Shown here: positions 30,390 to 58,323 of the stretch, piece after piece
Position numbering within the stretch: the stretch's first letter is position 1
Layout: every line of letters starts with the position of its first letter
The notes under the pieces: generated by a model
The model's input: only the letters and a program-made list of their open reading frames with translations
What the model was told of the DNA's origin: nothing
Databases searched by the model: none
Translations under genes and position numbers: made by a program
IMG/VR virus record: IMGVR_UViG_3300037042_006844
Span: 186,001-250,000 of that record
Strand: one strand, 5' to 3'
Length of the DNA stretch: 64,000 nt

Positions 30390-30438
30390 ATTTTTGGAGG
30401 AAGGAAACCTCTTCGGCTTTAGCCTAGGGGTAGTTGAC
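30390..30438 (+). mobile_element. 49-bp collapsed IS200/IS605 scar (left end fused to right end through one hairpin)
   Basis: TTCAT|ATTTTTGGAGGAAGGAAACCTCTTCGGCTTTAGCCTAGGGGTAGTTGAC matches 5' half of LE and 3' half of RE of 51357-52681. Confidence 0.85.
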
Positions 30439-31105
30439 TGTATAGATTGCTTTTGAAATTGACGTATGTATCTTTTACATAGGATAGCTCATCTGCGCAT
30501 TTTCTATAACTCAATTGATATGCTATGTGTTCTTCTGGTATGTATGATGTCATTTCAGTTCGTTTGTATAACTCATTGAATGTATAGTCGATTGAAAGAT
30601 GCCAATTCCAGTGGTTCAGCATGTGTTTGAAAGGAACATATGCTGTGTTTCTGATCATCATGAAATGTGTGGTGTGATGCCAGTTCAAAGGTTTCGAAAC
30701 CAAATCGCTGATTTTTTCTTTTATTGTGTCAGTGTCGTGCATCGGATGATACCCAAGATTTAATATGTCCCAATCAGATGGAACTTTATTGTAAAACCTC
30801 TTAAACTTCTCTTGCCAATCTCTCAACAAAAAACAATCATCTTCAATGATCCCAACTCGTTTAATGCCACTGATTCGACACGATTCGGTTATGGACAGAT
30901 ATGCCGAAATCAGACTGATGGATGGCCTGGACTCTCGTTGTGGGGGGCTATGAAGAATTCGGTTTGGATCGATAATTTCAAAAAACGGCGCGATGTGGAA
31001 CTCAAATTTGACACCACGAGAATCCAAATGGCTTCGGATATAATCCACTCTATTCGAGTCGATGGTTGTTATGACAAAAACTTTTTCACAAATATCGTTT
31101 AACAT
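30419..31105 (-). CDS. GT25-like glycosyltransferase (C-terminal SQLPLG* encoded by IS right end)
   Basis: KVFVIT, IIEDDC, WDILNLG; close paralog of 62982-63647. Confidence 0.8.
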   Translation of the reverse strand: MLNDICEKVFVITTIDSNRVDYIRSHLDSRGVKFEFHIAPFFEIIDPNRILHSPPQRESRPSISLISAYLSITESCRISGIKRVGIIEDDCFLLRDWQEKFKRFYNKVPSDWDILNLGYHPMHDTDTIKEKISDLVSKPLNWHHTTHFMMIRNTAYVPFKHMLNHWNWHLSIDYTFNELYKRTEMTSYIPEEHIAYQLSYRKCADELSYVKDTYVNFKSNLYSQLPLG

Positions 31106-31143
31106 AAATTCCGGCCACTATATATGTATATCGAAATAGTCGC

Positions 31144-32061
31144 ATGGAAGTCACAATTTTCACTTATAATAATGGTTCTGGTATTGTAGCAGACATACTC
31201 CTTTTGCAAAACCTGTTTATCAATAATGTAACAAAAACCGCAAAAGTCATATTCACCGATGCTTGTGGTTGGGAGGCTCAAAGCGGCGATCTCGGCGTTT
31301 GGGTCCAAAATCCCAGATATGACCAATTGTTCCGTTTCAAAAAAAATATCTGGTTCATCAATGAAGAGTGGGTCACCGACTATGATCTGAGCCATATCAA
31401 CGATTTTGATTATGTGGTATGCAAAAGTAAATTTGGCAAAAATTTACTTACGCCATATAGGCAGGATGTTTTATACATTCCATTTTTAAGTTATGATTGT
31501 TATGACCCCACTATAATCCGAACTGATAGGTTTCTACATCTGAATGGAAAAGCCATTCAGAAAAATACAGAATTGGTTATGCAGCAAACGGTGCCATTAA
31601 CAGTGTTGGACGTAACATCGAGGTTCGAGAAAATACCAAACAATATCAATTATATCACGGCCTTTTTGAACCGCAACCAAGTTAAATCGTTGCTCAATAC
31701 CCACGCCGTCCATCTATGCCCTAGTATGTATGAAAGCTGGGGGCACTATTTGTTTGAAGGGCTATCAACTGGTGCGGAAATCATATGCAGCGATATAGCA
31801 GCATTTTCAGAGCATTTGGACCCAAATTTGGTGCATATGCTTCCCGCAGTCGAAGGAAAAAATTTGGATTATTGGTTTGACTCCGACAACGCTACAAACC
31901 ATTTTTCTTTGCGCAAAAGCTACTACATCGATCCACAACTGTTTGCAGATTATATAAACAATTTCAAACCCAAAGGAAACCATCACGCTCGTCGCCAGTT
32001 ATATTTGGATATCATGTCCCGAAGTGAAAAACTGTTGATTGAGTTTTTCCTTAACTTGTAA
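31144..32061 (+). CDS. GT-B glycosyltransferase
   Basis: GKAIQKNT, HLCPSMYESWGHYLFE. Confidence 0.75.
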   Translation: MEVTIFTYNNGSGIVADILLLQNLFINNVTKTAKVIFTDACGWEAQSGDLGVWVQNPRYDQLFRFKKNIWFINEEWVTDYDLSHINDFDYVVCKSKFGKNLLTPYRQDVLYIPFLSYDCYDPTIIRTDRFLHLNGKAIQKNTELVMQQTVPLTVLDVTSRFEKIPNNINYITAFLNRNQVKSLLNTHAVHLCPSMYESWGHYLFEGLSTGAEIICSDIAAFSEHLDPNLVHMLPAVEGKNLDYWFDSDNATNHFSLRKSYYIDPQLFADYINNFKPKGNHHARRQLYLDIMSRSEKLLIEFFLNL

Positions 32062-32800
32062 CAAACCTGTAGTTCAATCTGTCGTTGAAATTCTGTGGTG
32101 TGTATTTTGCAAAATTGTGTGTATCATAGAGCGATTGATTGTAGGATGCCCCCTCAACGCCAATATGGTTCAGTCTCGACAATTTTGGCGTGACTGTTTT
32201 GAAATCGTTTTTGATGTAATCCATGATTGTGTCCCCAACACAACCTTGATGATTCCATTTGCTCACGCACTCCCTCCACATTTTTGCGGTGCATAAATAA
32301 CCCCATGTGGCAAAATACGACATTTCTGGAAATGCAGCCGAACCATAATTGTTTTTGATTTCCAAAATTTCTTTTCCATCATCATTCGTAGGTGGCTCAA
32401 TCAAATTGTCTTTGTTGAGATACGTGAAAATAGTTTTATTGTCATAATACGAAGAATTGATATAGAATTGAGTAATGTCGTTTATGTCATTGCTGAATAT
32501 GCAATCATCCTCTATATAAATGGCGTGATCCAACCGTAACCGCTCAAAACTGTAATACATGGTTACATATTGGTTGAGTAACAATCCATATTTGAACTGG
32601 TTGATCAACACCCGAACGTTTGGATATTTACGCAGTGCTATGATCGGATCTAAATCCACAAACTCTGGCTCCACCAAAAACACAAAATCGATTTTGTCAA
32701 AATCTCGCTGACCCAAACAAGATTTTACATACTGGTTGAAATACCCAACTCTGTGTGGTTGCCCAAGATAAACTGGTGTGACAATTGTTGTTCTGCTCAT
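32051..32800 (-). CDS. GT-A glycosyltransferase-like protein
   Basis: IYIEDD, TWG, SRLNHIG motifs. Confidence 0.7.
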   Translation of the reverse strand: MSRTTIVTPVYLGQPHRVGYFNQYVKSCLGQRDFDKIDFVFLVEPEFVDLDPIIALRKYPNVRVLINQFKYGLLLNQYVTMYYSFERLRLDHAIYIEDDCIFSNDINDITQFYINSSYYDNKTIFTYLNKDNLIEPPTNDDGKEILEIKNNYGSAAFPEMSYFATWGYLCTAKMWRECVSKWNHQGCVGDTIMDYIKNDFKTVTPKLSRLNHIGVEGASYNQSLYDTHNFAKYTPQNFNDRLNYRFVTS

Positions 32801-33402
32801 AAATCATCGGGTGTGCTATAATTCCAAATCAAAGGCCAAAGTCGCTCAAACACGCAACATGCTGTAAGTGTCTCTCTGTTATCGACTATTTTGGTGTATT
32901 GATTAAATATTGTTTGTGCGTGTATCCACCAATCTAGGCTTTTACTGACGATAAACTTTCGAGGAACAATATACTGAGAACCCGCACTGAACACGAACTG
33001 CGTTGTGGTATTGTAACCCCAATTACCAAACAGTTTATAGCAAACTTCAAGCATGGGGAGGGACTCTCCGGCACCAGGCCCGCCAGTAAAATCTTTTGTA
33101 ACTGGTCCCCAATTACTTCCCAGCCACACCACTTGATCTGGGTCTGGGTTTTTTCTTATTAAATCCAAAACATCCCAACAATGATCGAACGGGTCTGCTT
33201 GTAAGAAGACGGTTTGTGTATCTAAAGAATTGTAATTGTTTACTATGTGATGCAGCACTGTGCCAGTGTCTCGTCCGAAATTGGGCACGGATGTAAACTT
33301 TTGTTTTATATCTGGTAGTCCTTTGTTGTATATCTGAACACCACATGGTAACGAATCTACCCAATCAATATTTTCTCGGTATCTGGTTATGATCACCGTC
33401 AT
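32797..33402 (-). CDS. DUF3431-like (GT-associated) protein
   Basis: RYRENIDW, IYNKG, PNFGR, HIVNNY, FLQADPFDH, GSQYIV, FERLW. Confidence 0.75.
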   Translation of the reverse strand: MTVIITRYRENIDWVDSLPCGVQIYNKGLPDIKQKFTSVPNFGRDTGTVLHHIVNNYNSLDTQTVFLQADPFDHCWDVLDLIRKNPDPDQVVWLGSNWGPVTKDFTGGPGAGESLPMLEVCYKLFGNWGYNTTTQFVFSAGSQYIVPRKFIVSKSLDWWIHAQTIFNQYTKIVDNRETLTACCVFERLWPLIWNYSTPDDL

Positions 33403-34580: not shown

Positions 34581-34583
34581 AGC

Positions 34584-35477: not shown

Positions 35478-35480
35478 AAT

Positions 35481-36615: not shown

Positions 36616-36626
36616 AGTCTACTGAA

Positions 36627-36669
36627 TACATAGTTATTATATAGGTTACATAGTTATTATATAGGTTAC
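36627..36669. repeat. Perfect 20-bp tandem duplication
   Basis: TACATAGTTATTATATAGGT x2 plus TAC. Confidence 0.9.
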
Positions 36670-37784: not shown

Positions 37785-38803
37785 AATAAATGTGTTCGGT
37801 GATATTGTTTTGTCAATGCAAGGTGCGATTGATAAAATTTAACATCGATGTTATGCTCCGTCAATACCTCATCAATGTTGTTCATAAACACCGAATATTC
37901 TGGGTGTTTTGCACAGACTTTCTCTAAAATTATTTGGAACCACGATAGCAATCTAAGTCCTTCAGACGGATTGGTTTGCAATTGCGATATGTATGGATAC
38001 TGCGGGGATTTATCGATCATTTTGATCGTGTCTCCGAAATTGCGCATATGATAGTATTTCGCCCCATTGAACATTTCATCATCGACCCGCGTGTCGTTTG
38101 AATTATTATAACAATACAACATATTCCGCTCGTTGACCAGAACGCTGCGACGATAGTCATACATTTCTTTGACCCTCACGCTCGGCAATAACGATGCTAC
38201 ATTACGAGAAAACAACTCCATACTTTCCACTGTCGCAACATCACAATTTTTATCTGGCGCGGCACTGTATTTCGTATAAAAATCATAGCTGCATCCAAAT
38301 AATGTCGCCGCAAAACGAGTTTTTGCCCCTCGATTGGAGATTGGTCGCATGATCGGAATTCGATACATCAAATTCTTCGAATCAGTCATGTCCGCGTTTT
38401 GCCAATTCACAAACAAAACGTGGGTGGGGTGAACACGGGTTCCCGAATCCAAATTACCCACGATATCGTAATTGTTCAAATCAGAAAAAATGTCTGTGAA
38501 AACGGAACGATCATAGATTACACAATCGCTATCCATTACAACAAACTTGTCCCCAGGTGACAACGTGGCTATACCACGCTCAATATTTTCTTGATGAATG
38601 ATACTGCCACAGTCTTTCAAAATCCGAACAGTTTTTCCGTCGATCACAAACTCGCACTCATCCAAACCCATTCGAGTTGGGCAGATGAGCACTTGATCGG
38701 CATCTATTCTATGAATATTATCCATCACGTATTCAAACAACAGCCTACCCAGCAATTTGTTGGTGCGGTTATATTTGATGAATGGAATAATAACTGTGTT
38801 CAT
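37781..38803 (-). CDS. GT-A-like glycosyltransferase (paralog set A)
   Basis: HQENIE, VMDSDC, ESMELFS. Confidence 0.65.
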   Translation of the reverse strand: MNTVIIPFIKYNRTNKLLGRLLFEYVMDNIHRIDADQVLICPTRMGLDECEFVIDGKTVRILKDCGSIIHQENIERGIATLSPGDKFVVMDSDCVIYDRSVFTDIFSDLNNYDIVGNLDSGTRVHPTHVLFVNWQNADMTDSKNLMYRIPIMRPISNRGAKTRFAATLFGCSYDFYTKYSAAPDKNCDVATVESMELFSRNVASLLPSVRVKEMYDYRRSVLVNERNMLYCYNNSNDTRVDDEMFNGAKYYHMRNFGDTIKMIDKSPQYPYISQLQTNPSEGLRLLSWFQIILEKVCAKHPEYSVFMNNIDEVLTEHNIDVKFYQSHLALTKQYHRTHLL

Positions 38804-39702
38804 AACGTGGCGGCTAAAATTTTGCTTGAAGCATCTAGCCATTTATCATAAAATGCAACGTTGCAATTACGGCACAACTCGTAGAACCGAGTGTATGCCG
38901 TGTTTTGTCTTGCCAGTTTGTTGTGCAACGCCATAGTTAGATAGTCATAAGTGATACCCGTCATATGCTCCCACCATATATCGGGCATACGATTCAGCAA
39001 CAATAACTGTTTGCCGTCATCAACCACATGCTCCATGATTTGCGTGGAAACGTAATCAAAATGATCATACACCACATCTTCAATGCCGTCAATTACACAA
39101 ATTGTTTTTTTGTTGGCAATCGTCATTGGAGCACTAAGCGCAAAATCTTTGGTGCCGTCAAACGGAGGAAAAAACTTCACTGCTTTATTATATGACACCC
39201 CGCAAGATTGTCGCGTCGCAAGATTTGGCATGGCTGAAAAATTTCGATCTGTTTTTTTCAAATTCGACATTCGACATCCCCAAAAACTAGGCCATAGTCG
39301 CACATCCATGATGCGCTGCCCAGCAGTATAATTTCCAAACAGCACATATTCTTGGTTTAACATGATGTCCACAATTCGGTCCCAGTCACCTATGAAATCT
39401 GGCTCGAAACTGAAAATGTAATCCGCATTGCTATTATCTATGGCGAGGTTCATTGCTATGCTTCGCCAGTCATGAATTCCGTTACTTTCATGGCGGCAGA
39501 TCGTAATGTCACATTTACCAACAAGATCGTTCGTGATAAAATCGATGTGGCTGTTTTCACTCTGAGTCAACACATGATATCGAGCGACATCGAAAATGTA
39601 ATGGATTTTATTGAATCTGGAATGATACCGATGAATAAAATCCCGTATCATGGGACTATCAAATTCGGCAGCAGCAATTATAACAACATCTACTTTATTC
39701 AT
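38800..39702 (-). CDS. GT-A-like glycosyltransferase (paralog set A)
   Basis: DWR, FEPDF, LWPSFW, YDHFDYVS, WEHMTG. Confidence 0.65.
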   Translation of the reverse strand: MNKVDVVIIAAAEFDSPMIRDFIHRYHSRFNKIHYIFDVARYHVLTQSENSHIDFITNDLVGKCDITICRHESNGIHDWRSIAMNLAIDNSNADYIFSFEPDFIGDWDRIVDIMLNQEYVLFGNYTAGQRIMDVRLWPSFWGCRMSNLKKTDRNFSAMPNLATRQSCGVSYNKAVKFFPPFDGTKDFALSAPMTIANKKTICVIDGIEDVVYDHFDYVSTQIMEHVVDDGKQLLLLNRMPDIWWEHMTGITYDYLTMALHNKLARQNTAYTRFYELCRNCNVAFYDKWLDASSKILAATL

Positions 39703-39976
39703 AATCTTTGGAGGAAGGAAACCACGACGGCTTTAGCCTCGTGGAGGAATTCCGACCAATATAATAAGTTTTTTGACATCTTCAGTATTCTGTGATATAG
39801 TTATGTTTGAAGATTGATTTCTTCAAACATCTGCCTCACGTTAGAAATAATGTCTGGACAGCAGGCCACAGTCAATTGGCCAAACGGAAACCTCACGGTT
39901 TCCAATGAATGTAAATCTTTGAACATAAGTTTGGAGTCTTTCAAGCACCTATCCCTTTAGGGTAGGTGTGGTTGAC
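39703..39976 (+). mobile_element. Non-autonomous IS200/IS605 element (LE + promoter + omega-RNA + RE, no ORF)
   Basis: TTCAT target, LE GGAGGAAGGAAA-hairpin-GAGGAATTCCGACC, RE CAAG-hairpin-GTTGAC. Confidence 0.85.
39773..39801 (+). promoter_or_regulatory. Sigma70 promoter inside the ORF-less element
   Basis: TTGACA-N17-TGaTATAGT (extended -10). Confidence 0.75.
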
Positions 39977-39996
39977 ACCAACCGTTTACAAACCGT
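39803..39996 (+). ncRNA. Putative stand-alone TnpB omega-RNA (scaffold to 39976, guide about 39977-39996)
   Basis: Four hairpins; CAGGCCACAGTCAATTGGCCAA is covariant with CAGGTGACTGTCAACTCACCAA at the tnpB 3' end; GTCAA loop complementary to terminal TTGAC. Confidence 0.7.
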
Positions 39997-41112
39997 TCCA
40001 TAGATATCCTCATCCAATCCCTTTGTCAACGACCAAATTCCAAATTTGTCCAGCACAGCCTGCATGTCATTTTCAGCCTCAAAAATGCCAATGATCTCGT
40101 CCAATCTTCCTTCGTAGTTGCCGAAAAATTCAAACTCCTCTGGTTTTTTAAGAGCATACAACATTTGTCGCATTAGCAACAAACGGCGATACATTTCAAC
40201 TATTTCCCGATATCCGTAATCGAATTGTCGGACGTGCCGCATATACGCAACATAGCTGGAATTTTCATCCCACACGCCATCGGTTGGTTTCCACAGTCTG
40301 TTGCCCAACATGCTGGACAACGATCCAACGTGGAAATCCAGAGACGTATCCAAAATTTGTGGTATAAGCGCGTTATCTTCCAGTCTGCTATGATACAACT
40401 CATGTAGCATTTTAACACGTTTCACTTCTGGATTTTGATACAACTCCATAGAAAATCCAACCATTGTATCACCATTACAATCCTCTGTCAATACAGTCTC
40501 GGAATCTCCCAGTTTCAACGTCGTTCCCACAGGCCATGCTCTGGCACAAAAATTACGGCTTGAATTGAAAAAATGCTTTTTCTTGGTCAATAAAAGCGTG
40601 GGCCAGAAATTGAGTGTATATTCCTCTTTTCTCAGTTTGGCATTAAGATAAAAATCAGGCTTACTATAAACATATTGTCGAATGAGTTCTGCCATATATG
40701 GAGTGCAAGAGCCTCTTGGGCACCCCAAAACGTCATAGTTCTCATCAAAATACTCTTTGATTTCGATTTCAAGCAATGCGGGATTCAGCACATAGTCGTC
40801 CTCCTCCATCAACAAAATATTTTCTTTGATGTCGGGTTCAAACCTAGTTAACAAACTGTCAATATTATGACCATGCTGTCCAAGCGCATAGTTGTAATGG
40901 TTCTGCACATTTGGTAGTCGATTTAGCTGCCGCCCAATGTAATTTTTAATAAACAAAAACTCCATTGGATTAAGCTTGCCCATGCAGTCAATCGCAATAT
41001 AGGTGTTGTTGACCAGATGGCTATATTTGCTATAGTTTTGTAGCCAGAACTGCATTATCAATGGCTCACCGGTTGCAGGAAGCAATAGTGAAATTTCTCT
41101 GTTGGTGCTCAT
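39949..41112 (-). CDS. GT-A-like glycosyltransferase (paralog set A; C-terminal STTPTLKG* from IS right end)
   Basis: HGHNID, MEEDDY, FWPT, GDTMVGFS, HVGSL. Confidence 0.7.
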   Translation of the reverse strand: MSTNREISLLLPATGEPLIMQFWLQNYSKYSHLVNNTYIAIDCMGKLNPMEFLFIKNYIGRQLNRLPNVQNHYNYALGQHGHNIDSLLTRFEPDIKENILLMEEDDYVLNPALLEIEIKEYFDENYDVLGCPRGSCTPYMAELIRQYVYSKPDFYLNAKLRKEEYTLNFWPTLLLTKKKHFFNSSRNFCARAWPVGTTLKLGDSETVLTEDCNGDTMVGFSMELYQNPEVKRVKMLHELYHSRLEDNALIPQILDTSLDFHVGSLSSMLGNRLWKPTDGVWDENSSYVAYMRHVRQFDYGYREIVEMYRRLLLMRQMLYALKKPEEFEFFGNYEGRLDEIIGIFEAENDMQAVLDKFGIWSLTKGLDEDIYGTVCKRLVSTTPTLKG

Positions 41113-50344: not shown

Positions 50345-50396
50345 CTTAAAAATTGCCTATAGCACATCGATGAATTAACTGGTTTTAATGACATGT

Positions 50397-51356
50397 TCAT
50401 GGTTTAATAAAAGTGTCGTGAATGTTATGGTAATTTATTCTACCAGAAAAAACTTGATCAAACGGAACATATATATACAATAACGCGTGTCTAACATAGA
50501 CTGTATTTTGATCCATCGCGTGCAGTGCGCAATTCAAATTAAGCTTTCTTTCTGCATTGGAGTCATTTACAAAATTTTTCATGAACGCATATACTATAGG
50601 ATGGTCATTTTTGTTTAATCTATCAAACTCTTTATATAGATCATAATTGTGTTTGAGACAATTTTCAAAAAATAATTTCATCGTTGTTGGTGATCCAATG
50701 TGATAATAATCACCGCCGTAGAGATGCCCCGTGCGTGCAAGAAAAAAATTTAGGTGTATGATTCGTTTTTGTATTTGTTTTAGCGGCGAAATTATAAAAT
50801 TGTTTATGTCCCTGAATTCATGTTCGTTTATTTCGGTCCCATAGCACATCAATAAATCTGGCCGGGTGTGGATCACCAAATCAGCATCATCATTTACCAA
50901 GTCCACCATTTTTTCATACTTCACAAGCTGTCGGCTGGTCCAATAATCAAAATCAATAACTCTATCTTTTAATTCGACATTTTTAATATTGCGCAGACAG
51001 TCTTCGTATTGATCAAACTGCTCTTTTTTTAATGCATCTACATCGGCCAATACTATTTTTTTGAAATCGATGTGCCGTTTGAACTCATCGAGCCATTCGT
51101 TGAAATCATCCAGTGTATATTCTTTGTATAATTCTGGAAAGTATGTTTTGCCATACTTCAAAATGGCTGGCTTAAAATTAATCTCTGGGTATGTGTATAA
51201 AACATGTTCAAATTCTATTTTGTCGTAGTTGGTGTTTGCCTCCTTATTTATATAGTCAATGTCCATTTTATCAAAAAAATTTTTGAAATACGTGGCAGTG
51301 GCACTGCCACGCAAATGACCTTTATATATAACTTGAATCTTTAATACGTTTTTCAT
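50397..51356 (-). CDS. Putative glycosyltransferase-like protein
   Basis: GHLR and TRPDL motifs; located in glycosylation island. Confidence 0.5.
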   Translation of the reverse strand: MKNVLKIQVIYKGHLRGSATATYFKNFFDKMDIDYINKEANTNYDKIEFEHVLYTYPEINFKPAILKYGKTYFPELYKEYTLDDFNEWLDEFKRHIDFKKIVLADVDALKKEQFDQYEDCLRNIKNVELKDRVIDFDYWTSRQLVKYEKMVDLVNDDADLVIHTRPDLLMCYGTEINEHEFRDINNFIISPLKQIQKRIIHLNFFLARTGHLYGGDYYHIGSPTTMKLFFENCLKHNYDLYKEFDRLNKNDHPIVYAFMKNFVNDSNAERKLNLNCALHAMDQNTVYVRHALLYIYVPFDQVFSGRINYHNIHDTFIKP

Positions 51357-51418
51357 AATCTTGGAGGAAGGAAACCCCTTCGGCTTTAGCCAAGGGGAGG
51401 AATTCCGACCATTTAACT

Positions 51419-51447
51419 ATCTTAACACAACCACCTCAATTTGTCAA
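51419..51447 (-). promoter_or_regulatory. Outward-facing promoter in element left end
   Basis: TTGACA-N17-TGtTAAGAT pointing to gene 50397-51356. Confidence 0.65.
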
Positions 51448-51509
51448 CCACAAAAATATTTTAACTTTTTTGATGTTTTGTTATTTTCATTACTATTTAT
51501 ATCGTAGTA

Positions 51510-52670
51510 ATGATAACATACAATGTCAAATTAAAGTTTGCTAAACAAGATGATTACAATAATCTTCTTGAATCGCTCAAACTAAATCAATTGGCTTGGA
51601 ATATCATAAGTGAAGAACGATTCTCAATGACGGGTGGAAGATTGAAGCTTCTTCACGACAAGTGTTATTATAAAGTAAAAGAAGCAATTCCTACAATTCC
51701 TTCTCAATTTATCATTAAAGCAGAACAAGATGTAATTGCTACATATAAAACTATCAAGTCAAATAAACATAAACTTGATTCTCCTGCAATAAAAAAGAAT
51801 CTATCAATACAACTAGATAAACGCATATACAAGTGGATAGATAAAACTAATATCAAAATAACAACATTAGATAAACAAGCAATCGCTTCGTTTGATGTGT
51901 ATGATAAATTAAACCAATTTGACTTCAATAAGTTAAAAGATCCAAAACTATTTTTCAAAAATGGAGATTTTTACCTAAGTCTAATATTTGATACGAATGT
52001 TCCTTTTGTAGATAACAATAAAATCATAGGAATTGATGTTGGATTAAAAAGACTTGTATCAACAAGTGAAGGTATCATAATTAAAGGCAATGAATTCAAT
52101 GGACATAAACGTAAAATTCGTTGGAACAAAAGAAAACTTCAATCCAAGAAAAAATCACATTCCGCAAGAACAAAACATAAAAAACTTAAAAGGCGTGAAT
52201 CAAACTTTAGCAGAAATTATATACACAATGTTACAAAGAATGTAATTGTAAATACAAGTGCAAATACACTCGTAGTAGAAGATTTGAGCAAAATCAAAAG
52301 CAAAAATAAAGGTAGAAGATTTAATAATAGATTGAGTCAACTTCCATTTTTTGCGTTTAGATCCATATTAACATACAAGGCACAACTTTATGGGAAAAAA
52401 GTTGAAACAGTTAACCCTGCCTATACAAGCCAAATAGACCATAGAGGTTTAGCTGGTGGAAAAAGAAAGGGATGTAGATATTATGGATTGGATAAAGTAA
52501 TATTAGATTCGGATGTAAATGCCGCAATCAATATTGCAAATAGATATGTAAACAATTTAAGTTTGCATAAACACTCTGTTTCGTGCTGCAAAGCACTTGA
52601 TGGACAGGTGACTGTCAACTCACCAATCGTCGGAAGTTTCTTCCGGCAAGCCCCTATGGCTTTAGCCTAG
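51510..52670 (+). CDS. tnpB: TnpB RNA-guided endonuclease lacking canonical zinc-ribbon cysteines
   Basis: GIDVG / VVEDL / DSDVNAA RuvC triad; YKAQ, VNPAYTSQ. Confidence 0.92.
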   Translation: MITYNVKLKFAKQDDYNNLLESLKLNQLAWNIISEERFSMTGGRLKLLHDKCYYKVKEAIPTIPSQFIIKAEQDVIATYKTIKSNKHKLDSPAIKKNLSIQLDKRIYKWIDKTNIKITTLDKQAIASFDVYDKLNQFDFNKLKDPKLFFKNGDFYLSLIFDTNVPFVDNNKIIGIDVGLKRLVSTSEGIIIKGNEFNGHKRKIRWNKRKLQSKKKSHSARTKHKKLKRRESNFSRNYIHNVTKNVIVNTSANTLVVEDLSKIKSKNKGRRFNNRLSQLPFFAFRSILTYKAQLYGKKVETVNPAYTSQIDHRGLAGGKRKGCRYYGLDKVILDSDVNAAINIANRYVNNLSLHKHSVSCCKALDGQVTVNSPIVGSFFRQAPMALA

Positions 52671-52701
52671 GGGTTGTTGACAACGATTTCGCCAGAACAT
52701 T
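52560..52701 (+). ncRNA. Cis omega-RNA overlapping tnpB 3' end; guide about 52682-52701 (5' boundary approximate)
   Basis: GGTGA-CTGTCAAC-TCACC, CGGAAG-TTT-CTTCCG and RE hairpins; GTCAA/TTGAC pseudoknot. Confidence 0.7.
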
Positions 52702-53106
52702 AGTTTCCGCATTCATTCTTCCTTTGTTTTGATCGAACATCGTAAACAACTTATGAAATTGGTCGTCTTTGTTGATAACTACCCAAGTATTGGTTTGCTC
52801 ATCCATGCACATGACCACGGCATCCAGTTTGATTTTGGCAAGCTTTTTGTCCAAAATTTCAATAATAGTATCAGAAGCGACTTTCAATGGAATCGTTTCA
52901 GTCTCGGTTTTGACGTTTATCACAACCAAATTTTCGTATAGAGTTTCGAGGTCAATATTGGCGCGTTGCCATTGTTGTTCTGTATCTGAATAAAACACCA
53001 CTGTATTATCATCAATCCTCACAACATCGGTTTTATTGATATGCCGCAATGTGCTCATTGGCACGGAATACATTTTGTTGTTGTAGTATATCTCTTTCAT
53101 GCTCAT
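52654..53106 (-). CDS. Hypothetical protein (C-terminal STTPRLKP* from IS right end)
   Basis: ORF in operon with ATGA overlap to upstream gene. Confidence 0.6.
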   Translation of the reverse strand: MSMKEIYYNNKMYSVPMSTLRHINKTDVVRIDDNTVVFYSDTEQQWQRANIDLETLYENLVVINVKTETETIPLKVASDTIIEILDKKLAKIKLDAVVMCMDEQTNTWVVINKDDQFHKLFTMFDQNKGRMNAETNVLAKSLSTTPRLKP

Positions 53107-55733
53107 AGGCTTTTGTAGATTTTCGAATTGACCAGACTTTCTAGGAAATACTCAATCTCGACTTTGTAACGAATTGTTTTGAGATACAAATGCGCAGACC
53201 GAATCAACTCCAAATTTTGGATTTTTTGCTCTAAATCATTTTGATTTTCAATGTAAAGTGGATATGACTCTCCCAAATATTCTTCCACGGCTGGAAGCCG
53301 GTTGATAAACAATGGGGTGCCACGGGCAATGCACTCGATGATGCCGTTGTTGGCACTGCTGTCATACAAATCGAGATACACCAAATTCTCGGACAAAATC
53401 TGGTCGTATTCTTCATTTGGCAAAAAATCCAGCACTTGCACAGAGTTTCGTTGCTCAATCGAAACCGTTTGATTGTTCACGACCTCTTCGATCTTCTCCA
53501 ACCGCATGATCGTTTCTTTGCATTTATTGTTGGGAAGCAATCGAATTTTTTGATAACCTTGGGGTTGCACAGTATATAGTGCATTTAGCTTTCGCAGCCA
53601 CCAGCCGATTGATATCAATTTTTTGTTCGGGTTGCTGGCAAATTTATCAAAATCAAACTGCACCGCTGGTATTTCAGTTGGATGCAATAAAGATTCAACT
53701 TGAACAAACGGCAAATATTGTCTTATGAATCGGGCATGATATTCGCTTAGTGTGAACAGCCCTTTGCATTTGCGCAGACTATCCAGAAAATAAGGGTCGT
53801 GTAGGATAATATTGCAAAACGCACTATTGTCACTGAACCAGGGAGACATGTTCGGTGGGTTGTGGAGAAAACCCACCCAGCTTTTGTTGTATGGAATCAA
53901 TTTTTGAAGAACAGATTCGTTCTTTCTCCAACTAAAATTGTTCTCTAAAAACCCGTCACAATATACACCATTGTCGGAATTTAATGCCGACATCTCATTC
54001 AACACATAATTCCAACCTGAACGATGTGAGTAGAAACTGAGTTGGCGACCCAGATTGAGTTTTTTTGGATATTTTTGAAGTGCTACTGTTTCTTTGAACT
54101 TCAAAACTACATCGCCGTATTCGCCTTTGGTCAACACGTTGCTTTTCTCGACGATGAATCCGGTTTCATTCAACACGTCCGCTTCGAAATTTCTGTCTTT
54201 GAGAATTAGTTTGCTGGTATTATTACGAATGCCATTGACAAACAAATCAACTATTTTGATGCCATACAAACTGGTTGGGGCACGATTGATCAGATCCCCA
54301 CTGAACACATCTGTTTGAAACTGTATATTTTTAGTGTGTTTGCCGATGATTTTGATGGAATACTGACCTCGTTTCAACTCAAAATTATGAACCGTGCCAT
54401 CGACTGTGAATTTCAAATCACAATCTTTCATCGACTCGATCAACATTTCTAGTTTGTAAACTTCTCCTCCGACGATTAGTTCGGATGTGCCATTACTCCA
54501 AACCCCCGAACTGAGGTTTTCTTGGTGCCATCCATTTTTGAAATAGATGGGAAACAACGAGCTTTCTTCGGTGAGATCGGTATGGGGCTGATAACTGTCG
54601 AGATGTGTGAAATACACGCTGCTGCGAATACTGTCATAATATGCTGCTTTGAAAACATTGCTTAAATCGTCATATGATGGATCAATACCTTTGGTGCGGG
54701 GATCGCAAACGGCATCTGTTACAATGTTGTCTGTGATTTTGATTACACTATAATCTACCTCGTATAATTTTTTATATCCAGTGAGATAGTCCACCATACC
54801 ACCGTGAAGTGGAGTGATGATTCCTTTGTTTTTCTCTTTTGCGGTATAACACGGAATGCTGAAGCCTTCTCCTCGACTGACGTTTACATACACGTCGCAA
54901 TTGTCATATAAACTCTGCATCCGATCAAAACTCAATGCATCCGTTATCAACGCTATCGGAGCGTATGCAAAATTGGCGTGCTTGTTTTTGATTTTATTGA
55001 CGATCAGGTTTTGAATCGTTTTGTCAAAACCCTTCAAATTAAATTTGTTGTCCGTCAGTTTGAGAACCAACAACGTTTCATCATCAAACTCGAACGTGCT
55101 CAAATAATTGTCGATCAAAAAAGATGTGTTTTTTCGACCAGCCAACGTGGTTACGTTCAGAAATTTGATGCGTTTTTCAAAACGACGATAATTTACGGCA
55201 ACAGGTGAGAAAATTTTGGCACAATTCAGCGTGTCGATTAAATTGATGCTTTCGTATGGAATGCTGGGCACCGTATGGGGGTCAACCACAATTTCTTTTT
55301 TGACACCTGATTTAATAAATACTTCTTTGGTCCATTGAGACGGAACACTAACAATATTCACAATACTATCATTAATAGCTTTTACCCATTTTTCTGGCAA
55401 TGGATCAAAATCCCACACGGTTCTGCCAATGATTTTTCGGTCTCCAAACAGATCGGAGTAGTTTTCAAAAATTTTACCCCACATATTGGGGGTGATATGA
55501 ACTACTATTTCCGCATCTTTTAGTTTTTCGGATCGCCCAAAAAGGGGAAGTTTGCGTAGGTTGCTATGGAAATACTTTGCGAACTCCGTGTTGTTTTTGG
55601 TGGTAGCGCCGGATACTGGAACAAAATAAACATCTACACCTTGCTGCAAAAGGCTATACATATAACCCTTTGCAGCATTGGCATATCCGCTAGAACCGTC
55701 TGCACCAAAATATACAACTTGTTTAGAACTCAT
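53103..55733 (-). CDS. Three-domain protein: GT4-like + beta-sandwich + second GT-B-like domain
   Basis: GSSGYANAAKG...GEGFSIP; GWHQE...W; HRSGW, HPTE, IGWWLR, SANNGIIEC. Confidence 0.75.
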   Translation of the reverse strand: MSSKQVVYFGADGSSGYANAAKGYMYSLLQQGVDVYFVPVSGATTKNNTEFAKYFHSNLRKLPLFGRSEKLKDAEIVVHITPNMWGKIFENYSDLFGDRKIIGRTVWDFDPLPEKWVKAINDSIVNIVSVPSQWTKEVFIKSGVKKEIVVDPHTVPSIPYESINLIDTLNCAKIFSPVAVNYRRFEKRIKFLNVTTLAGRKNTSFLIDNYLSTFEFDDETLLVLKLTDNKFNLKGFDKTIQNLIVNKIKNKHANFAYAPIALITDALSFDRMQSLYDNCDVYVNVSRGEGFSIPCYTAKEKNKGIITPLHGGMVDYLTGYKKLYEVDYSVIKITDNIVTDAVCDPRTKGIDPSYDDLSNVFKAAYYDSIRSSVYFTHLDSYQPHTDLTEESSLFPIYFKNGWHQENLSSGVWSNGTSELIVGGEVYKLEMLIESMKDCDLKFTVDGTVHNFELKRGQYSIKIIGKHTKNIQFQTDVFSGDLINRAPTSLYGIKIVDLFVNGIRNNTSKLILKDRNFEADVLNETGFIVEKSNVLTKGEYGDVVLKFKETVALQKYPKKLNLGRQLSFYSHRSGWNYVLNEMSALNSDNGVYCDGFLENNFSWRKNESVLQKLIPYNKSWVGFLHNPPNMSPWFSDNSAFCNIILHDPYFLDSLRKCKGLFTLSEYHARFIRQYLPFVQVESLLHPTEIPAVQFDFDKFASNPNKKLISIGWWLRKLNALYTVQPQGYQKIRLLPNNKCKETIMRLEKIEEVVNNQTVSIEQRNSVQVLDFLPNEEYDQILSENLVYLDLYDSSANNGIIECIARGTPLFINRLPAVEEYLGESYPLYIENQNDLEQKIQNLELIRSAHLYLKTIRYKVEIEYFLESLVNSKIYKSL

Positions 55734-55739
55734 TTGTGA

Positions 55740-55787
55740 ATGAATTACCCACCCGCTAAAGCAGGTGGGTTTTCTGCTCCCTAAAAG
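55740..55787 (-). mobile_element. About 48-bp collapsed IS200/IS605 scar of a related subfamily (target TTTAT)
   Basis: Minus strand TATTTAT|CTTTTAGGGAGCAGAAAA-CCCACCTGCTTTAGCGGGTGGG-TAATTCAT; right boundary could extend to TTCAC at 55736. Confidence 0.7.
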
Positions 55788-55827
55788 ATAAATAGTGCTG
55801 TAACCAGTTTAGTGATTTATTATACAA

Positions 55828-56787
55828 TCACTTCGATGTGGTTTTGATGATTTTGGCTATACAAGCCATGAATGTGATTTCTTTGTCAACCACCATCGAA
55901 TTTTGATATAAACTTTCAGATATGTCGATGATCACACTAATGTCATTTCCGTTGCTGTATTCAGATACCTTGTTGTAGAGTTCAGAATACAACTCATCAA
56001 ACATTTTGATTCCCGCATCGTTAACCAGTTGGCGAACTTCATTGAAAACTTTTTTATTGGTTTTTGCTTCCCGCAACAACTGCACCAATTTTTGTTTTAG
56101 ATCATGCCCAGCACTTTGGGTCTTGATCAACTCCAAAACTCCATTCGTAGAGCTTTGCTGCATGAAATTTACAATCTTTCGAATATCTGGATAGAAATCT
56201 TTGACAACAGTTGCCACGGTTGGCATGTCGTATTTGATCTTTTCTGCATCTAGGATTTTGATTGCGTATTTCGCCACATCTTTCATTGTGGGAGGCTCCA
56301 GCTTAAACACTTGGAGACGACTCCGCAATGGGTCAATCATCTTTTCATAATAATTGCAGGTTAGAATAAACCGTGTGGTTTTGCTGTATGTTTCCGTCAG
56401 ATTACGCAACGATGCCTGAGATGCTGCCGACATATAATCAGCCTCATCCAAAATCACAATCTTCAAATCGTGAAACCCCATCGATGCAGCGAATGGCTTG
56501 ATTCTATCGCGAACAAAATCCACGCCCGTATTGTCGGATGCGTTTACATACATCGTATCACACGGAATATTTTTGGCCAGAATTTTTGCCAGAGTGGTCT
56601 TGCCTGTGCCAGGGGAGCCATGAAACAAAAGGTGTGGAACCTCTTTTTTAGAGATGAAACTCGTGATAATCGTCCGAAGTTGGTCATTGCAAATGTAATT
56701 ATCTGTCGTCTCTGGGCGGTATTTCTCGACCCAAAGACCATGATCGTTCACAACCGTCCGAGTGATGGTTTGTTCAAAAAAACTCAT
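55828..56787 (-). CDS. Clamp loader AAA+ subunit (gp44/RFC small-like)
   Basis: WVEKYRP, GSPGTGKTT, NASD, LDEAD, FILTCN, RSR. Confidence 0.95.
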   Translation of the reverse strand: MSFFEQTITRTVVNDHGLWVEKYRPETTDNYICNDQLRTIITSFISKKEVPHLLFHGSPGTGKTTLAKILAKNIPCDTMYVNASDNTGVDFVRDRIKPFAASMGFHDLKIVILDEADYMSAASQASLRNLTETYSKTTRFILTCNYYEKMIDPLRSRLQVFKLEPPTMKDVAKYAIKILDAEKIKYDMPTVATVVKDFYPDIRKIVNFMQQSSTNGVLELIKTQSAGHDLKQKLVQLLREAKTNKKVFNEVRQLVNDAGIKMFDELYSELYNKVSEYSNGNDISVIIDISESLYQNSMVVDKEITFMACIAKIIKTTSK

Positions 56788-56792
56788 AAATA

Positions 56793-57569
56793 TTAGTCGA
56801 TGTTTTTGATTTCAACCAAGAAATAGCTTCCACTGAACGTGTCAGTATCTACTTCGATGTTTGACAACCCAGCATCGCTGACTTTCCAAACTGCATTATC
56901 ACACTCACTGTTGCTGGTGATGATTTCTTTCAAATACTTTGCATTGAAATGCATCGTCTTGCCCAGCTTATCCTTGCCACCAGTTGGTTTGATTTCGACG
57001 TTGATTCGATTGCTGTTGACACTGCTGTATCCCAGCGTCATTTTGATCTTTCCTTTTTTATCGGTTGTGAGAGTCAAAACATCATTGTCGCTCAAAGCAT
57101 TTTTTGCCTTGATAAATGTTGCTGTAAACTCTTTGGTCAACGGAATTTCCAAATTGAAATTGGGAAGCTTTTTGAGAGGAGGAACGACTGGAATGACGCT
57201 AAGATCGGCGGTGCAATACTGAACATCTGTTTCGCCACTCACAACTGTCATGGATGTGATTTTCTCGACACTTTCCGTATTGCCGTCCAAATCTTGTGTT
57301 TCAACTTTAATTTTGTTTGGAGTAATTTCAACATCGTCGCCAAGAACCGTGAGCATTTTCTTGAGCTTGCTGGTATCATTGACACCAATTTCCAAATCTT
57401 CAAGACCAGCGTTGTCTTTCAGAGTAACAAAACTAAGAACACCACGATCATCGCTCATAGAGCTTGTTTTGATGTTTTTATCTTTTGCTGAAACGGTCCA
57501 TTTGACGCTTTCAATGGTGCCGTTGAGGGAGTATTTATCGATAAACGAATTGAGTGTAGCTTTCTTCAT
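56793..57569 (-). CDS. Putative sliding clamp (gp45-like)
   Basis: 258 aa two-lobed pattern, located between DNA polymerase and clamp loader. Confidence 0.7.
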   Translation of the reverse strand: MKKATLNSFIDKYSLNGTIESVKWTVSAKDKNIKTSSMSDDRGVLSFVTLKDNAGLEDLEIGVNDTSKLKKMLTVLGDDVEITPNKIKVETQDLDGNTESVEKITSMTVVSGETDVQYCTADLSVIPVVPPLKKLPNFNLEIPLTKEFTATFIKAKNALSDNDVLTLTTDKKGKIKMTLGYSSVNSNRINVEIKPTGGKDKLGKTMHFNAKYLKEIITSNSECDNAVWKVSDAGLSNIEVDTDTFSGSYFLVEIKNID

Positions 57570-57602
57570 ATTTGACTATTCTACCGTATTGTTGTGTGGA
57601 TG

Positions 57603-58010
57603 TCAACTGAATTGAAAAAATTCAGATGTGTGTGTATTTATTGTGACTTTCTCGCTGATACATGGTGTGCCGTCCGATAGGAACAGATCAGTGGGAGAGA
57701 TATAAAAATTGTTGATGGCATAATCTGCATATGCCACAGTGCGCATTTGATAGTAAACCATGACGTTGCTTTCGTCATTGGTGCGAAACTCAATGTAATA
57801 CACTTTCGGATCGCTCAATCGAAACAGTTGCGAACGGGGGATGTAAAGGTTTTGTTGGTTAAGTTGAGTTTTTGTGAATTCAACGTATGGTCCACGTTGC
57901 CCAATTACGACGCGTTCGTATTTGTCCGCTATAAGGGTGCCAGATTTTGTGTATAGATTGATTTTACACCCATCTTCAAAAATATTCAATAACTCGCTAT
58001 CTTTTTTCAT
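57603..58010 (-). CDS. Hypothetical protein
   Basis: YERVVIGQRGPYVEF, YYQMRTVAYADY. Confidence 0.7.
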   Translation of the reverse strand: MKKDSELLNIFEDGCKINLYTKSGTLIADKYERVVIGQRGPYVEFTKTQLNQQNLYIPRSQLFRLSDPKVYYIEFRTNDESNVMVYYQMRTVAYADYAINNFYISPTDLFLSDGTPCISEKVTINTHTSEFFQFS

Positions 58011-58074
58011 AGTTTTGGAGGAAGGAAACCTCTTCGGCTTTAGCCAAGAGGAGGAATTCCGACCACTTCTTAAT

Positions 58075-58103
58075 ATCCTATACTAGGGTCAACCGAAAGT
58101 CAA
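58075..58103 (-). promoter_or_regulatory. Outward-facing promoter in element left end
   Basis: TTGACT-N17-TAGGAT pointing to gene 57603-58010. Confidence 0.55.
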
Positions 58104-58149
58104 TACGAAAGTGAATGCTCCCAAGGTCTAAAGACCTTGGGCGTCTGTG

Positions 58150-58290
58150 TTAAGTTGCCTTAACAAAAGAGTCCATTCCGACTCTCAAAATGTTTCGTGC
58201 TGCGTTAAGGTCTCGTCCAATGTTAAGATTACAAATAGGACATTTGTGCTGTCTCTCCGACAACTCCTTCTTAACTATGGTTCCGCACCC
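58150..58290 (-). pseudogene. tnpB: C-terminal remnant of a third TnpB, followed by its own right end (hairpin 58120-58141, TTCAC ending 58111)
   Basis: Translates as GCGTIVKKELSERQHKCPICNLNIGRDLNAARNILRVGMDSFVKAT*. Confidence 0.85.
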
Positions 58291-58323
58291 CTACGTCTTT
58301 AGCGTAGGTGTGGTTGACATATG

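What the first reader, a model, noticed from the sequence alone, without database searches (positions are those of the whole stretch)
30390..58318. A TnpB/IS200-605 family that inserts exactly at start codons and repairs both neighbouring genes
Seen: four related elements (30390-30438, 39703-39976, 51357-52681, 58011-58318) share the left end A.T..TGGAGGAAGGAAA-hairpin and right end hairpin-GTTGAC. All four follow TTCAT, whose complement ATGAA is the start of the adjacent minus-strand gene (MKS, MNK, MKN, MKK). Deleting each element gives a sensible junction: TTG GTA TGA and TCG TTA TGA (canonical ATGA stop/start overlaps at 39.7 and 51.4 kb), TAA-CATAT-ATG after the DNA polymerase, and a short overlap (YNEI*) at 30.4 kb. 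In three cases the upstream gene now ends in a stop codon inside the right-end hairpin (SQLPLG*, STTPTLKG*, STTPRLKP*). Established: Y1 TnpA target choice follows guide/cleavage-site pairing as in IS608 (G1-C2, G2-C1, G4-C4); here GAAA/TCAT and CAAG/TGAC both obey that rule, independently supporting the boundaries. Inference: a TTCAT target plus built-in stop codons and promoter lets the element colonise a genome with almost no intergenic space at little cost; survivor bias probably also contributes.
Basis: partly seen in the sequence, partly recalled or inferred. Interest (0 to 1): 0.9.

Follow-up and report, generated by a model that had tools for sequence, protein, structure and literature searches.

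The report
Phage transposon family docked at start codons
Four copies of an IS200/IS605-type transposon (one carrying an RNA-guided TnpB nuclease gene) sit immediately before the start codons of genes in a giant phage genome; their target word TTCAT is the mirror of ATGAA, and selection seems to keep only insertions that break no gene.

Summary
The four elements exist at the stated coordinates, share the left and right ends, and each follows TTCAT, the reverse complement of the ATGAA start of the adjacent minus-strand gene.

- **Empty alleles:** A phage about 93% identical has empty alleles at two sites with exactly the predicted junctions. Six more distant relatives show the DNA-polymerase site empty. 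Homologues of the gene upstream of the TnpB copy lack its 8-residue tail.
- **What it is:** A genuine IS200/IS605 family. A Y1 TnpA lies in one sister copy elsewhere. TnpB has an intact RuvC triad and is under purifying selection. The 3' end is a covarying omega-RNA-like region. The guide and cleavage tetranucleotides follow the IS608 rule, and there is no target duplication.
- **Distribution:** I found 76 informative insertion sites in viral and metagenome contigs and none in 185,579 species genomes. Of these, 64% abut an ORF start, against 7% expected for random TTCAT and 75% among non-disruptive TTCAT sites in the window. Target word plus selection is therefore enough to explain the pattern; no start-codon homing is needed.
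- **New features:**
  - a conserved outward promoter next to the left end;
  - a phage-type motif before tnpB;
  - 23 single-hairpin relics of 49-51 bp;
  - a TnpB-less copy that keeps a promoter, the RNA scaffold and a guide matching the relative's empty site 21/21.

The parts
30390..30438 (+). E1: a 49-bp single-hairpin relic. It has the left-end 5' part, one hybrid hairpin and TAGTTGAC. There is no CAAG guide.
   Evidence: The empty allele in relative locus L060 gives exact boundaries. It is one of 23 such minis found.
29670..30389 (-). Glycosyltransferase family 25 gene whose ATGAA start abuts the left end of E1.
30419..31105 (-). Gene upstream of E1. Its last six codons and its stop lie inside E1 (SQLPLG*).
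   Evidence: The homologue in the relative ends YNEI* and overlaps the next gene by 11 nt.
39703..39976 (+). E2: a 274-bp element with no protein gene (PATE-like), carrying both ends.
   Evidence: The empty allele L058 gives exact boundaries and shows no target duplication.
39773..39801 (+). Inward sigma-70-like promoter in E2 (TTGACA, 17 nt, TATAGT; 11 of 12 matches, with TG), placed upstream of the RNA scaffold.
39837..39976 (+). Omega-RNA-like scaffold of E2, ending in CAAG (39942-45), the hairpin (39946-68) and TGGTTGAC.
   Evidence: It shares the covarying helices with the TnpB-bearing copies.
39977..39992 (+). Predicted guide of the E2 RNA (the flank next to the right end).
   Evidence: TTCAT plus 16 nt matches the relative's empty site 21/21.
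38800..39702 (-). 300-aa gene whose ATGAA start abuts the left end of E2.
39949..41112 (-). 387-aa gene upstream of E2, with an 8-residue tail (STTPTLKG) encoded by the right end.
   Evidence: All seven aligned homologues end 8 residues earlier; P0001 is 379 aa.
51357..52681 (+). E3: a 1325-bp element carrying tnpB only (IS1341-like layout).
51357..51412 (+). Left end of E3: linker, outer helix, GAAA guide, and a bulged hairpin with a TTTA loop.
   Evidence: DNA fold. The inner stem covaries: 41 of 45 copies are perfectly paired across 8 different perfectly paired arm sequences.
51419..51447 (-). Outward promoter-like site (TTGACA, 17 nt, TAAGAT, with TG) facing the left end and the downstream gene.
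   Evidence: The same position and -35 box are conserved in 31 of 40 copies, against 0.5% of shuffles.
51494..51501 (+). TATTTATA motif 8 nt before the tnpB ATG. The same motif and spacing occur before about 9 phage genes.
51510..52670 (+). tnpB, 386 aa. The RuvC D/E/D triad is intact and there are no zinc-ribbon cysteines. The ORF runs into the right-end hairpin.
   Evidence: Pfam OrfB_IS605 and Cas12f1-like_TNB. Nearest solved structure is ISDra2 TnpB. Family alignment. dN/dS 0.08-0.21.
52575..52681 (+). Omega-RNA-like scaffold of E3, overlapping the tnpB 3' end. It contains CAAG (52647-50), the hairpin (52651-73) and TTGTTGAC (52674-81).
   Evidence: 17 of 27 consensus pairs show compensatory changes.
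52682..52697 (+). Predicted guide of the E3 RNA.
   Evidence: Inferred from its position. No matching empty site was found.
50397..51356 (-). 319-aa gene whose ATGAA start abuts the left end of E3.
52654..53106 (-). 150-aa gene upstream of E3, with an 8-residue tail (STTPRLKP) encoded by the right end.
58011..58318 (+). E4: a 308-bp degenerate element. The left end is normal. The right end has an atypical hairpin and no CAAG guide.
   Evidence: Relatives have TAA plus 3-6 nt plus ATG at this junction.
58075..58103 (-). Outward promoter-like site in E4 (TTGACT, 17 nt, TAGGAT).
58119..58255 (-). Inverted remnant inside E4. It comprises about 33 codons of a zinc-ribbon-type TnpB C-terminus (CxxC ... 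RDLNAA) followed by a TTTA-loop hairpin (58119-42).
   Evidence: My reading of the sequence; hairpin.
57603..58010 (-). 135-aa gene whose ATGAA start abuts the left end of E4.
58324..61041 (-). Family B DNA polymerase. Its own TAA lies 5 nt before the right end of E4.

Best explanation
These are four copies of one IS200/IS605-family insertion sequence lineage that lives in large freshwater-type phage genomes.

Step 1, transposition (inferred by homology). A Y1 (HUH) TnpA, supplied in trans, moves the top strand as single-stranded DNA. It recognises the bulged subterminal hairpins. It cuts 3' of TCAT at the left, paired with the GAAA guide, and 3' of TGAC at the right, paired with the CAAG guide. 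It inserts 3' of TTCAT without duplication.

Step 2, retention at starts (shown statistically). TTCAT is the reverse complement of ATGAA. Any gene starting Met-Lys or Met-Asn therefore offers a site exactly between its ATG and whatever lies upstream. In a genome that is 95% coding, nearly all other TTCAT sites lie inside genes. Such insertions are lost, so what remains is mostly start-codon copies plus some intergenic ones.

Step 3, tolerance of these insertions (partly shown, partly inferred).
- This phage hardly uses Shine-Dalgarno sequences.
- The right end closes the upstream reading frame within 15-28 nt.
- A conserved promoter next to the left end points into the downstream gene.

Step 4, TnpB function (inferred). 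TnpB with the RNA encoded at the right end should cut TTCAT followed by the right-flank sequence. That is the empty allele, so cleavage restores or spreads the element by recombination, including between co-infecting phages.

The four window copies.
- E3 is the TnpB carrier.
- E2 is a TnpB-less guide-RNA carrier.
- E1 and E4 are decayed. E1 looks like a deletion between the nearly identical left and right hairpins.
For: Family membership.
- A Y1_Tnp TnpA (E 9e-36) lies inside a 1721-bp sister element with the same ends.
- Related TnpAs (75-80% identity) sit in elements with another left-end subtype but the same TTCAT target, GAAA guide and CAAG-hairpin-TTGTTGAC right end.
- TnpB Pfam hits, the triad conserved in 9 of 9, and dN/dS 0.08-0.21.
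- Hairpins fold and covary.
- The 3' RNA-like region has 17 of 27 covarying pairs.

Boundaries and no duplication: empty alleles and tail-less homologues.

Target: TTCAT precedes 123 of 129 left-end copies. The rest have CTCAT or TTTAT, or are cut off by the contig end.

Selection filter.
- 49 of 76 sites are at ORF starts, against 6.9% expected for random use and 75% among non-disruptive sites.
- None of 48 two-ended sites clearly interrupts a gene.

Tolerance.
- Only 7 of 81 genes have an SD-like motif.
- Stops fall at +15, +20 and +28 in the right end.
- The outward promoter is conserved in 31 of 40 copies.

Homing potential: the E2 TAM plus guide matches the relative's empty site 21/21.
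Against: - No TnpA is present in the window or in any held part of this contig, so current mobility here is unproven.
- No RNA or expression data exist, so the promoter and the omega RNA are sequence inferences.
- In the one TnpA-bearing copy, the promoter's -35 box lies in the last codons of tnpA. Part of its conservation could therefore be ancestry.
- All nine TnpBs lack the usual zinc-ribbon cysteines, so nuclease activity cannot be taken for granted.
- No site was seen in both full-length and mini form, so the deletion origin of the minis is not shown.
- The expected share of start sites comes from one 64-kb window and a crude gene call.
Confidence: 0.8

Rival explanations
1. Active start-codon targeting. 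The transposase or TnpB prefers the start of genes beyond the TTCAT word, for example because single-stranded DNA is exposed there. On this view the enrichment is an insertion bias, not a survival bias.
For: 64% of 76 sites are at ORF starts, against 7% for random TTCAT. Seven reconstructed junctions with a long upstream ORF are canonical ATGA overlaps.
Against: The share at starts (64%) is slightly below the 75% expected if all non-disruptive TTCAT sites were used equally. 27 sites are not at ORF starts. Nothing in the ends could read sequence beyond the 4-5 nt cleavage word.
Confidence: 0.08
2. Domesticated cassettes. The elements, especially the 49-bp minis and the promoter-bearing left ends, are kept because they serve the phage rather than as selfish DNA. 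Possible roles are promoters, RNA hairpins, or insulators between overlapping genes. REP elements or T4-type promoter/stem-loop cassettes would be the analogy.
For: The left end is almost invariant, while tnpB has diverged to 39% identity with synonymous sites near saturation. The outward promoter is conserved. Minis are the commonest form, 22 of 51 sized elements. tnpB carries the phage's own upstream motif.
Against: The same junctions work without any element in close relatives. Presence or absence is patchy. TnpA and TnpB are under selection, as in mobile copies. Conservation of the left end is also what TnpA recognition requires.
Confidence: 0.15
3. Spread mainly by RNA-guided homing. In phage populations the elements move chiefly by TnpB cleavage of empty alleles in co-infecting relatives followed by recombinational copying, much like free-standing homing endonucleases of T4-type phages. 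TnpA would be needed only rarely, to reach new sites.
For: Only 1 of 21 full-size (1.2 kb or longer) elements with this left end carries tnpA. TnpB is under strong purifying selection. E2 keeps a promoter, scaffold and guide without any protein gene. A natural empty allele matches its TAM plus guide 21/21. E3 and a mini of another subtype both sit at a junction where the downstream gene differs between relatives.
Against: At least 76 different sites require true transposition. There is no direct evidence of cleavage or co-conversion. The TnpBs lack zinc-ribbon cysteines.
Confidence: 0.3

Closest known systems
ISDra2 / IS605-group elements (tnpA and tnpB divergent; TnpB with right-end omega RNA)
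   Same: The autonomous sister copy has tnpA antisense to tnpB between hairpin ends. The nearest solved structure to this TnpB is ISDra2 TnpB. The RNA scaffold overlaps the tnpB 3' end and the right end. Insertion is 3' of a pentanucleotide with no duplication.
   Different: The target is TTCAT, not TTGAT. The TnpBs lack zinc-ribbon cysteines. tnpB reads through the right-end hairpin. There is a conserved outward promoter at the left end. The family was found only in viral and metagenome contigs.
IS608 (the structural paradigm for guide/cleavage-site recognition)
   Same: The cleavage word lies 18 nt 5' of the left hairpin foot and 8 nt 3' of the right one (IS608: 19 and 10). The four bases 5' of each foot pair with the cleavage word in the same C1-G2, C2-G1, C4-G4 scheme. 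T-4 and A-2 are present in both words (and the sequences).
   Different: The words differ (TCAT/GAAA and TGAC/CAAG, versus TTAC/AAAG and TCAA/GAAT). The gene order differs. An extra outer helix encloses the left hairpin.
ISGst5 of Geobacillus stearothermophilus
   Same: It has the same TTCAT target/TAM, shown experimentally there (10.1101/2023.03.14.532601).
   Different: ISGst5 carries IscB, not TnpB. It is a bacterial chromosomal element, and no start-codon pattern is described in the passages I read.
PATEs and IS1341-type non-autonomous derivatives
   Same: E3 (tnpB only) and E2/E4 (no gene, both ends) fit these classes. E2 keeps a guide-RNA scaffold.
   Different: The 49-51 bp single-hairpin form, with 23 distinct sites, is smaller than a two-hairpin PATE and lacks the right-end guide.
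IStrons and free-standing homing endonuclease genes of T4-type phages
   Same: Both are ways for selfish DNA to sit in dense genomes at low cost. Like seg/mob genes, these elements sit between genes and carry a nuclease that should cut the empty allele.
   Different: There is no intron (no Rfam hit at gathering score). Harm is avoided by position (before the ATG) and not by splicing. Target recognition is RNA-guided.

Membership tests
IS200/IS605 | Y1 (HUH) TnpA transposase associated with the ends | tested here: met
   Y1_Tnp E 9e-36 in the 1721-bp sister element in L020, which has the same ends. It is absent from the window copies, so these are non-autonomous.
IS200/IS605 | Subterminal imperfect hairpins at both ends and no terminal inverted repeats | tested here: met
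   DNA folds. 41 of 45 left-end stems are perfectly paired across 8 different perfectly paired arm sequences. The right-end stem covaries.
IS200/IS605 | Insertion 3' of a fixed 4-5 nt word, with no target-site duplication | tested here: met
   Exact empty alleles at two sites. TTCAT precedes 123 of 129 copies.
IS200/IS605 | Guide tetranucleotide 5' of each hairpin foot pairs with the cleavage word | tested here: met
   GAAA/TCAT and CAAG/TGAC fit the IS608 scheme. CAAG is invariant in 16 of 16 right ends. It is not met at the right ends of E1 and E4.
IS200/IS605 | Single-strand, strand-specific transposition | not testable with these tools
   All four window copies are on one strand, but n = 4 and the genes there are mostly on the minus strand.
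TnpB (OMEGA) nuclease | RuvC D-E-D triad and TNB domain | tested here: met
   Pfam hits. The triad is conserved in 9 of 9. The zinc-ribbon cysteines are absent, which is atypical.
TnpB (OMEGA) nuclease | Structured guide RNA encoded at the tnpB 3' end and right end, with the guide taken from the flank | tested here: inconclusive
   Structure is supported by covariation (17 of 27 pairs). Transcription and use as a guide were not tested. No Rfam family matched.
TnpB (OMEGA) nuclease | TAM equals the transposon's target word | not testable with these tools
   Predicted to be TTCAT from the flanks. A cleavage assay is needed.
IStron | Group I intron fused to the IS | tested here: not met
   No Rfam match at gathering score anywhere in the window.
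REP/RAYT | Many short palindromes plus a single domesticated Y1 gene | tested here: not met
   There is only one mini in 64 kb and no Y1 gene in the window.

The most novel reading that the evidence does not exclude
This is a lineage of IS605 elements specialised for life in phage genomes. On this reading:
- Its target/TAM is the mirror image of the commonest start context.
- Its right end closes the upstream frame.
- Its left end carries a promoter for the downstream gene.
- Its tnpB uses the phage's own promoter motif.
- TnpB with stand-alone guide-RNA copies acts as an RNA-guided homing system, or interference weapon, between co-infecting phages.
- The 49-bp single-hairpin relics are cleavage-immune alleles left behind.
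Probability: 0.3. Interest if true: 0.8.

Novelty: new member of a known kind. Interest (0 to 1): 0.58.

Why it matters
It gives a clean natural example of how a word-specific transposon can persist in a genome with almost no non-coding DNA. The target word coincides with a start-codon context, and selection does the rest.

It also identifies a large TnpB radiation that seems confined to phages. There are 866 homologues at E of 1e-20 or better, almost all from metagenomes and many on contigs of 180-350 kb.

Several features make RNA-guided homing between phages directly testable:
- a natural occupied/empty allele pair, including one guide-RNA-only copy whose guide matches the empty allele perfectly;
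- zinc-finger-less TnpBs;
- a conserved outward promoter.

Tried and rejected
- **Near-identical DNA in the phage collection:** none found.
- **Close-relative scans with three flanking proteins:** only the source contig was returned.
- **Exact-protein look-ups of the genes downstream of E3 and E2:** only occupied copies, or a contig broken inside the left end. The same happened for a sister site.
- **Exact search for the predicted E3 empty junction in metagenome contigs:** nothing.
- **Left-end pattern in 185,579 species genomes:** one hit, which lacks TTCAT and the hairpin and is spurious.
- **A site occupied by both a mini and a full element:** none among 78 clusters.
- **One apparent in-gene insertion (L021):** rejected, because homologues of the downstream ORF are stand-alone small proteins. 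The missing native stop of its upstream gene stays unexplained.
- **Three-frame stops in the right end as an adaptation:** rejected. They hold for one hairpin subtype only, and my rough estimate of the chance expectation is about 4%.
- **Literature:** I found no description of this start-codon pattern or of an outward left-end promoter in IS605 elements.

Full report
**Source and setting.** The window is part of IMG/VR contig IMGVR_UViG_3300037042_006844, which is 303,564 bp.
- It is about 40% G+C and about 95% coding by a simple greedy ORF call.
- Its family B DNA polymerase is most similar to that of Microcystis phage Mel-JY01 (39.5%). It is therefore a large, uncultured phage with no close isolate.

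**The observation.**
- The left-end 13-mer occurs exactly four times, always on the + strand. The loop word occurs five times. A strict hairpin scan finds nothing else of this kind in the window.
- Each element follows TTCAT. The reverse complement of each TTCAT is the first ATG of an ORF of 239, 300, 319 or 135 aa.
- Each element ends in GTTGAC after a hairpin.

**Boundaries.** A Logan contig from another sample, SRR23086399_25887 (49,960 bp), has neighbouring proteins about 93% identical and carries both the 39.7-kb and the 30.4-kb sites empty.
- The 379-aa and 300-aa genes overlap by ATGA. The sequence around the junction is identical to the window with bases 39703-39976 removed.
- The 225-aa and 241-aa genes overlap by 11 nt. 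This is identical to the window with 30390-30438 removed, apart from one substitution in the flank.
- There is no duplication at either site.
- All seven aligned homologues of the 387-aa gene end eight residues earlier than the window's copy.
- Six relatives with 68-71% identical polymerase have the stop, then 3-6 nt, then ATGAAAAA of the 135-aa gene's homologue.
- For the TnpB-bearing copy I found no exact empty allele. However, four homologues of its upstream gene end within one or two residues of the predicted native stop.
- A fifth homologue carries the tail of a different right-end subtype. In that contig a 50-bp mini of another left-end subtype sits at the same junction, before yet another downstream gene.
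- In the closest relative the downstream neighbour is a radical-SAM gene that starts ATGACC, so no TTCAT exists there.

**What the elements are.**
- *TnpB.* The 386-aa ORF in E3 matches OrfB_IS605 and the Cas12f1-like TNB domain. Its nearest solved structure is ISDra2 TnpB.
- *More copies.* Searching public contigs for the left-end pattern gave 31 viral and 88 metagenome loci.
- *TnpA.* One 1721-bp copy (L020) carries a 135-aa Y1_Tnp transposase (E 9e-36) antisense to tnpB, which is the IS605/ISDra2 layout.
- *Sister subtypes.* TnpA relatives at 75-80% identity sit in elements with a different left-end linker. They share the TTCAT target, the GAAA just 5' of the hairpin, and a right end of CAAG, hairpin, TTGTTGAC.
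Both pairs here satisfy it.
- *Hairpins.* The left-end inner stem is perfectly paired in 41 of 45 distinct copies, through eight different perfectly paired arm sequences. An outer helix encloses it.
- *Divergence.* The nine full TnpBs compared are only 39-85% identical. All keep the RuvC Asp, Glu and Asp residues. None has the usual CxxC zinc-ribbon cysteines. dN/dS is 0.08-0.21.
- *RNA-like region.* The last 110-140 nt of the elements form a conserved multi-helix structure, with compensatory changes in 17 of 27 pairs. This is the pattern expected of a TnpB guide-RNA scaffold. Rfam has no match.
- *E2.* It has lost tnpB but keeps this scaffold behind a strong inward promoter-like site.
- *E1.* It consists of the left-end 5' part, one hybrid hairpin and the right-end tail.
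- *E4.* It has a normal left end, an inverted remnant of a zinc-ribbon-type TnpB, and an atypical right end without CAAG.

**Why start codons.**
- In the window, 262 TTCAT sites exist on both strands: 18 at called gene starts, 6 intergenic and 238 inside genes.
- Across all contigs I found 79 distinct left flanks, of which 76 are informative. Of these, 49 (64%) abut an ORF of at least 50 aa, or an open frame running off the contig. The other 27 do not.
- That share is far above the 6.9% expected for random TTCAT use (P about 4e-38). It is slightly below the 75% expected if every non-disruptive TTCAT were equally usable (P 0.046).
- Among 48 sites with both flanks, none clearly interrupts a gene. 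The one candidate (L021) has a downstream ORF whose homologues are stand-alone small proteins.
- The pattern therefore needs only the target word plus loss of gene-breaking insertions. What does need explaining is why an insertion placed directly before an ATG is tolerated nearly as well as an intergenic one.

**Features that could make such insertions cheap.**
- *Little use of Shine-Dalgarno sequences.* Only 7 of 81 called genes have even a four-base match. The native junctions at the empty sites have none. Replacing the upstream bases therefore costs little.
- *Frame closure.* The reverse complement of the right end contains stops at +20 and +28 in all subtypes, and at +15 in the GGC-loop subtype. 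The upstream protein gains at most nine residues. I estimate that chance alone would close all three frames in about 4% of sequences of this composition, so I do not claim adaptation.
- *Outward promoter.* On the strand of the flanking gene, a TTGACA, 17 nt, TAnnnT site sits with its -10 box 8-9 nt from the conserved GGTCGG. It scores at least 10 of 12 in 31 of 40 distinct non-mini copies, against 0.5% of shuffles, although the spacer and the tnpB genes have diverged. In the TnpA-bearing copy the -35 box lies in the last codons of tnpA, so it may have begun as coding sequence. Its retention in the many copies without tnpA suggests a function.
- *Phage-type motif before tnpB.* tnpB in several subfamilies is preceded, 5-10 nt before its start, by TATTTATA. 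That motif sits at the same distance before about nine genes of this phage.

**Distribution.**
- The exact left-end pattern is absent from one genome each of 185,579 bacterial and archaeal species. The single hit is spurious.
- The TnpB has 866 homologues at E of 1e-20 or better. Nearly all of the 120 listed come from metagenome sources, and several lie on contigs of 180-350 kb.
- The source contig holds at least three more left ends outside the window (loci L014, L028 and L030), and L028 is a full-length copy with a TnpB only 43% identical to E3's. A third family TnpB (59% identical to E3's) is also recorded on a 303,564-bp contig.
- Size classes among 51 elements with both ends: 22 minis of 49-51 bp, 8 intermediate, 20 with tnpB only and 1 with tnpA.
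- The minis always have the right-end type right arm, with varied left arms. This fits repeated deletion between the two nearly identical hairpins. I found no site caught in both states.

**Homing potential.** By the established TnpB mechanism (Karvelis 2021; Meers 2023, for the preprint), the target is the TAM followed by the right flank, which is the empty allele. TTCAT plus the 16 nt that follow E2 match the empty site of the relative 21 of 21. A natural target for the E2 RNA therefore exists in a related phage. This is compatible with RNA-guided homing or interference during co-infection, but it is inference.

**Verdict.** The headline claim, that the element inserts at start codons and repairs its neighbours, is better stated differently: the element inserts at TTCAT, survives mainly where that word is a start codon, and carries ends that make this position cheap. 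It is a member of a known family with several features not described in the literature I could search.

Noticed in passing
window 1733-3521 (-): A second, unrelated mobile element of IS607 type lies between thymidylate synthase (597-1730) and a Sir2-family gene (3685-4551). It comprises a 196-aa serine recombinase (Resolvase domain) followed by a 408-aa TnpB with a zinc ribbon. The 2-4 kb bin that covers most of it has only 31% G+C.
   Followed up: partly
window, e.g. 9750, 11285, 12816, 13199, 17395, 51494 (+); 62040, 8947, 27533 (-): The motif (C)TATTTATA lies 5-8 nt before the ATG of about nine genes and of tnpB. Only 7 of 81 genes have a Shine-Dalgarno-like motif. This looks like a phage promoter with near-leaderless transcripts.
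   Followed up: partly
window 58119-58255 (-): Inside E4, on the opposite strand, lies a remnant of about 33 codons of a different TnpB C-terminus (with CxxC and RDLNAA), followed by its own TTTA-loop hairpin. This suggests an older nested or inverted insertion.
   Followed up: partly
window 50397-53106; L059 4172-5670; L166; L168 780-900: The junction after the 150-aa gene is a swap point. Its downstream neighbour is a 319-aa gene here, a radical-SAM gene in three relatives, and a third gene in L168. In L168 a 50-bp mini of another left-end subtype sits at the same junction.
   Followed up: partly
L021 1050-2381 and flanks: Removing this element in silico leaves the 394-aa upstream gene in frame with the downstream 122-aa gene and with no stop between them. 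Yet the downstream family consists of stand-alone small proteins. The native stop is unaccounted for.
   Followed up: partly
L065 ~2940-3010 (rc), L066 ~125-190 (rc), window 51367-51411: An outer helix around the left-end hairpin covaries between left-end subtypes: GG-A-GGAA/TTCC-GA-CC, TTGTCG/CGACAA and TTCGTTG/CAACGAA. This suggests a larger conserved left-end fold.
   Followed up: no
window 52575-52670 and sister elements: The tnpB ORFs run through the RNA scaffold and into the right-end hairpin, ending at a TAG 11 nt from the element tip. The last residues (QAPMALA or QAPIPLG) are therefore dictated by the hairpin sequence.
   Followed up: no
L043/L044 13116-18556: Two polymerase relatives carry about 5.4 kb of extra DNA between the homologues of the 135-aa and 258-aa genes.
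   Followed up: no
L078, L088, L093, L103, L165: A few left ends follow CTCAT or TTTAT instead of TTCAT. The fifth base, and sometimes the C, is therefore not absolute.
   Followed up: no
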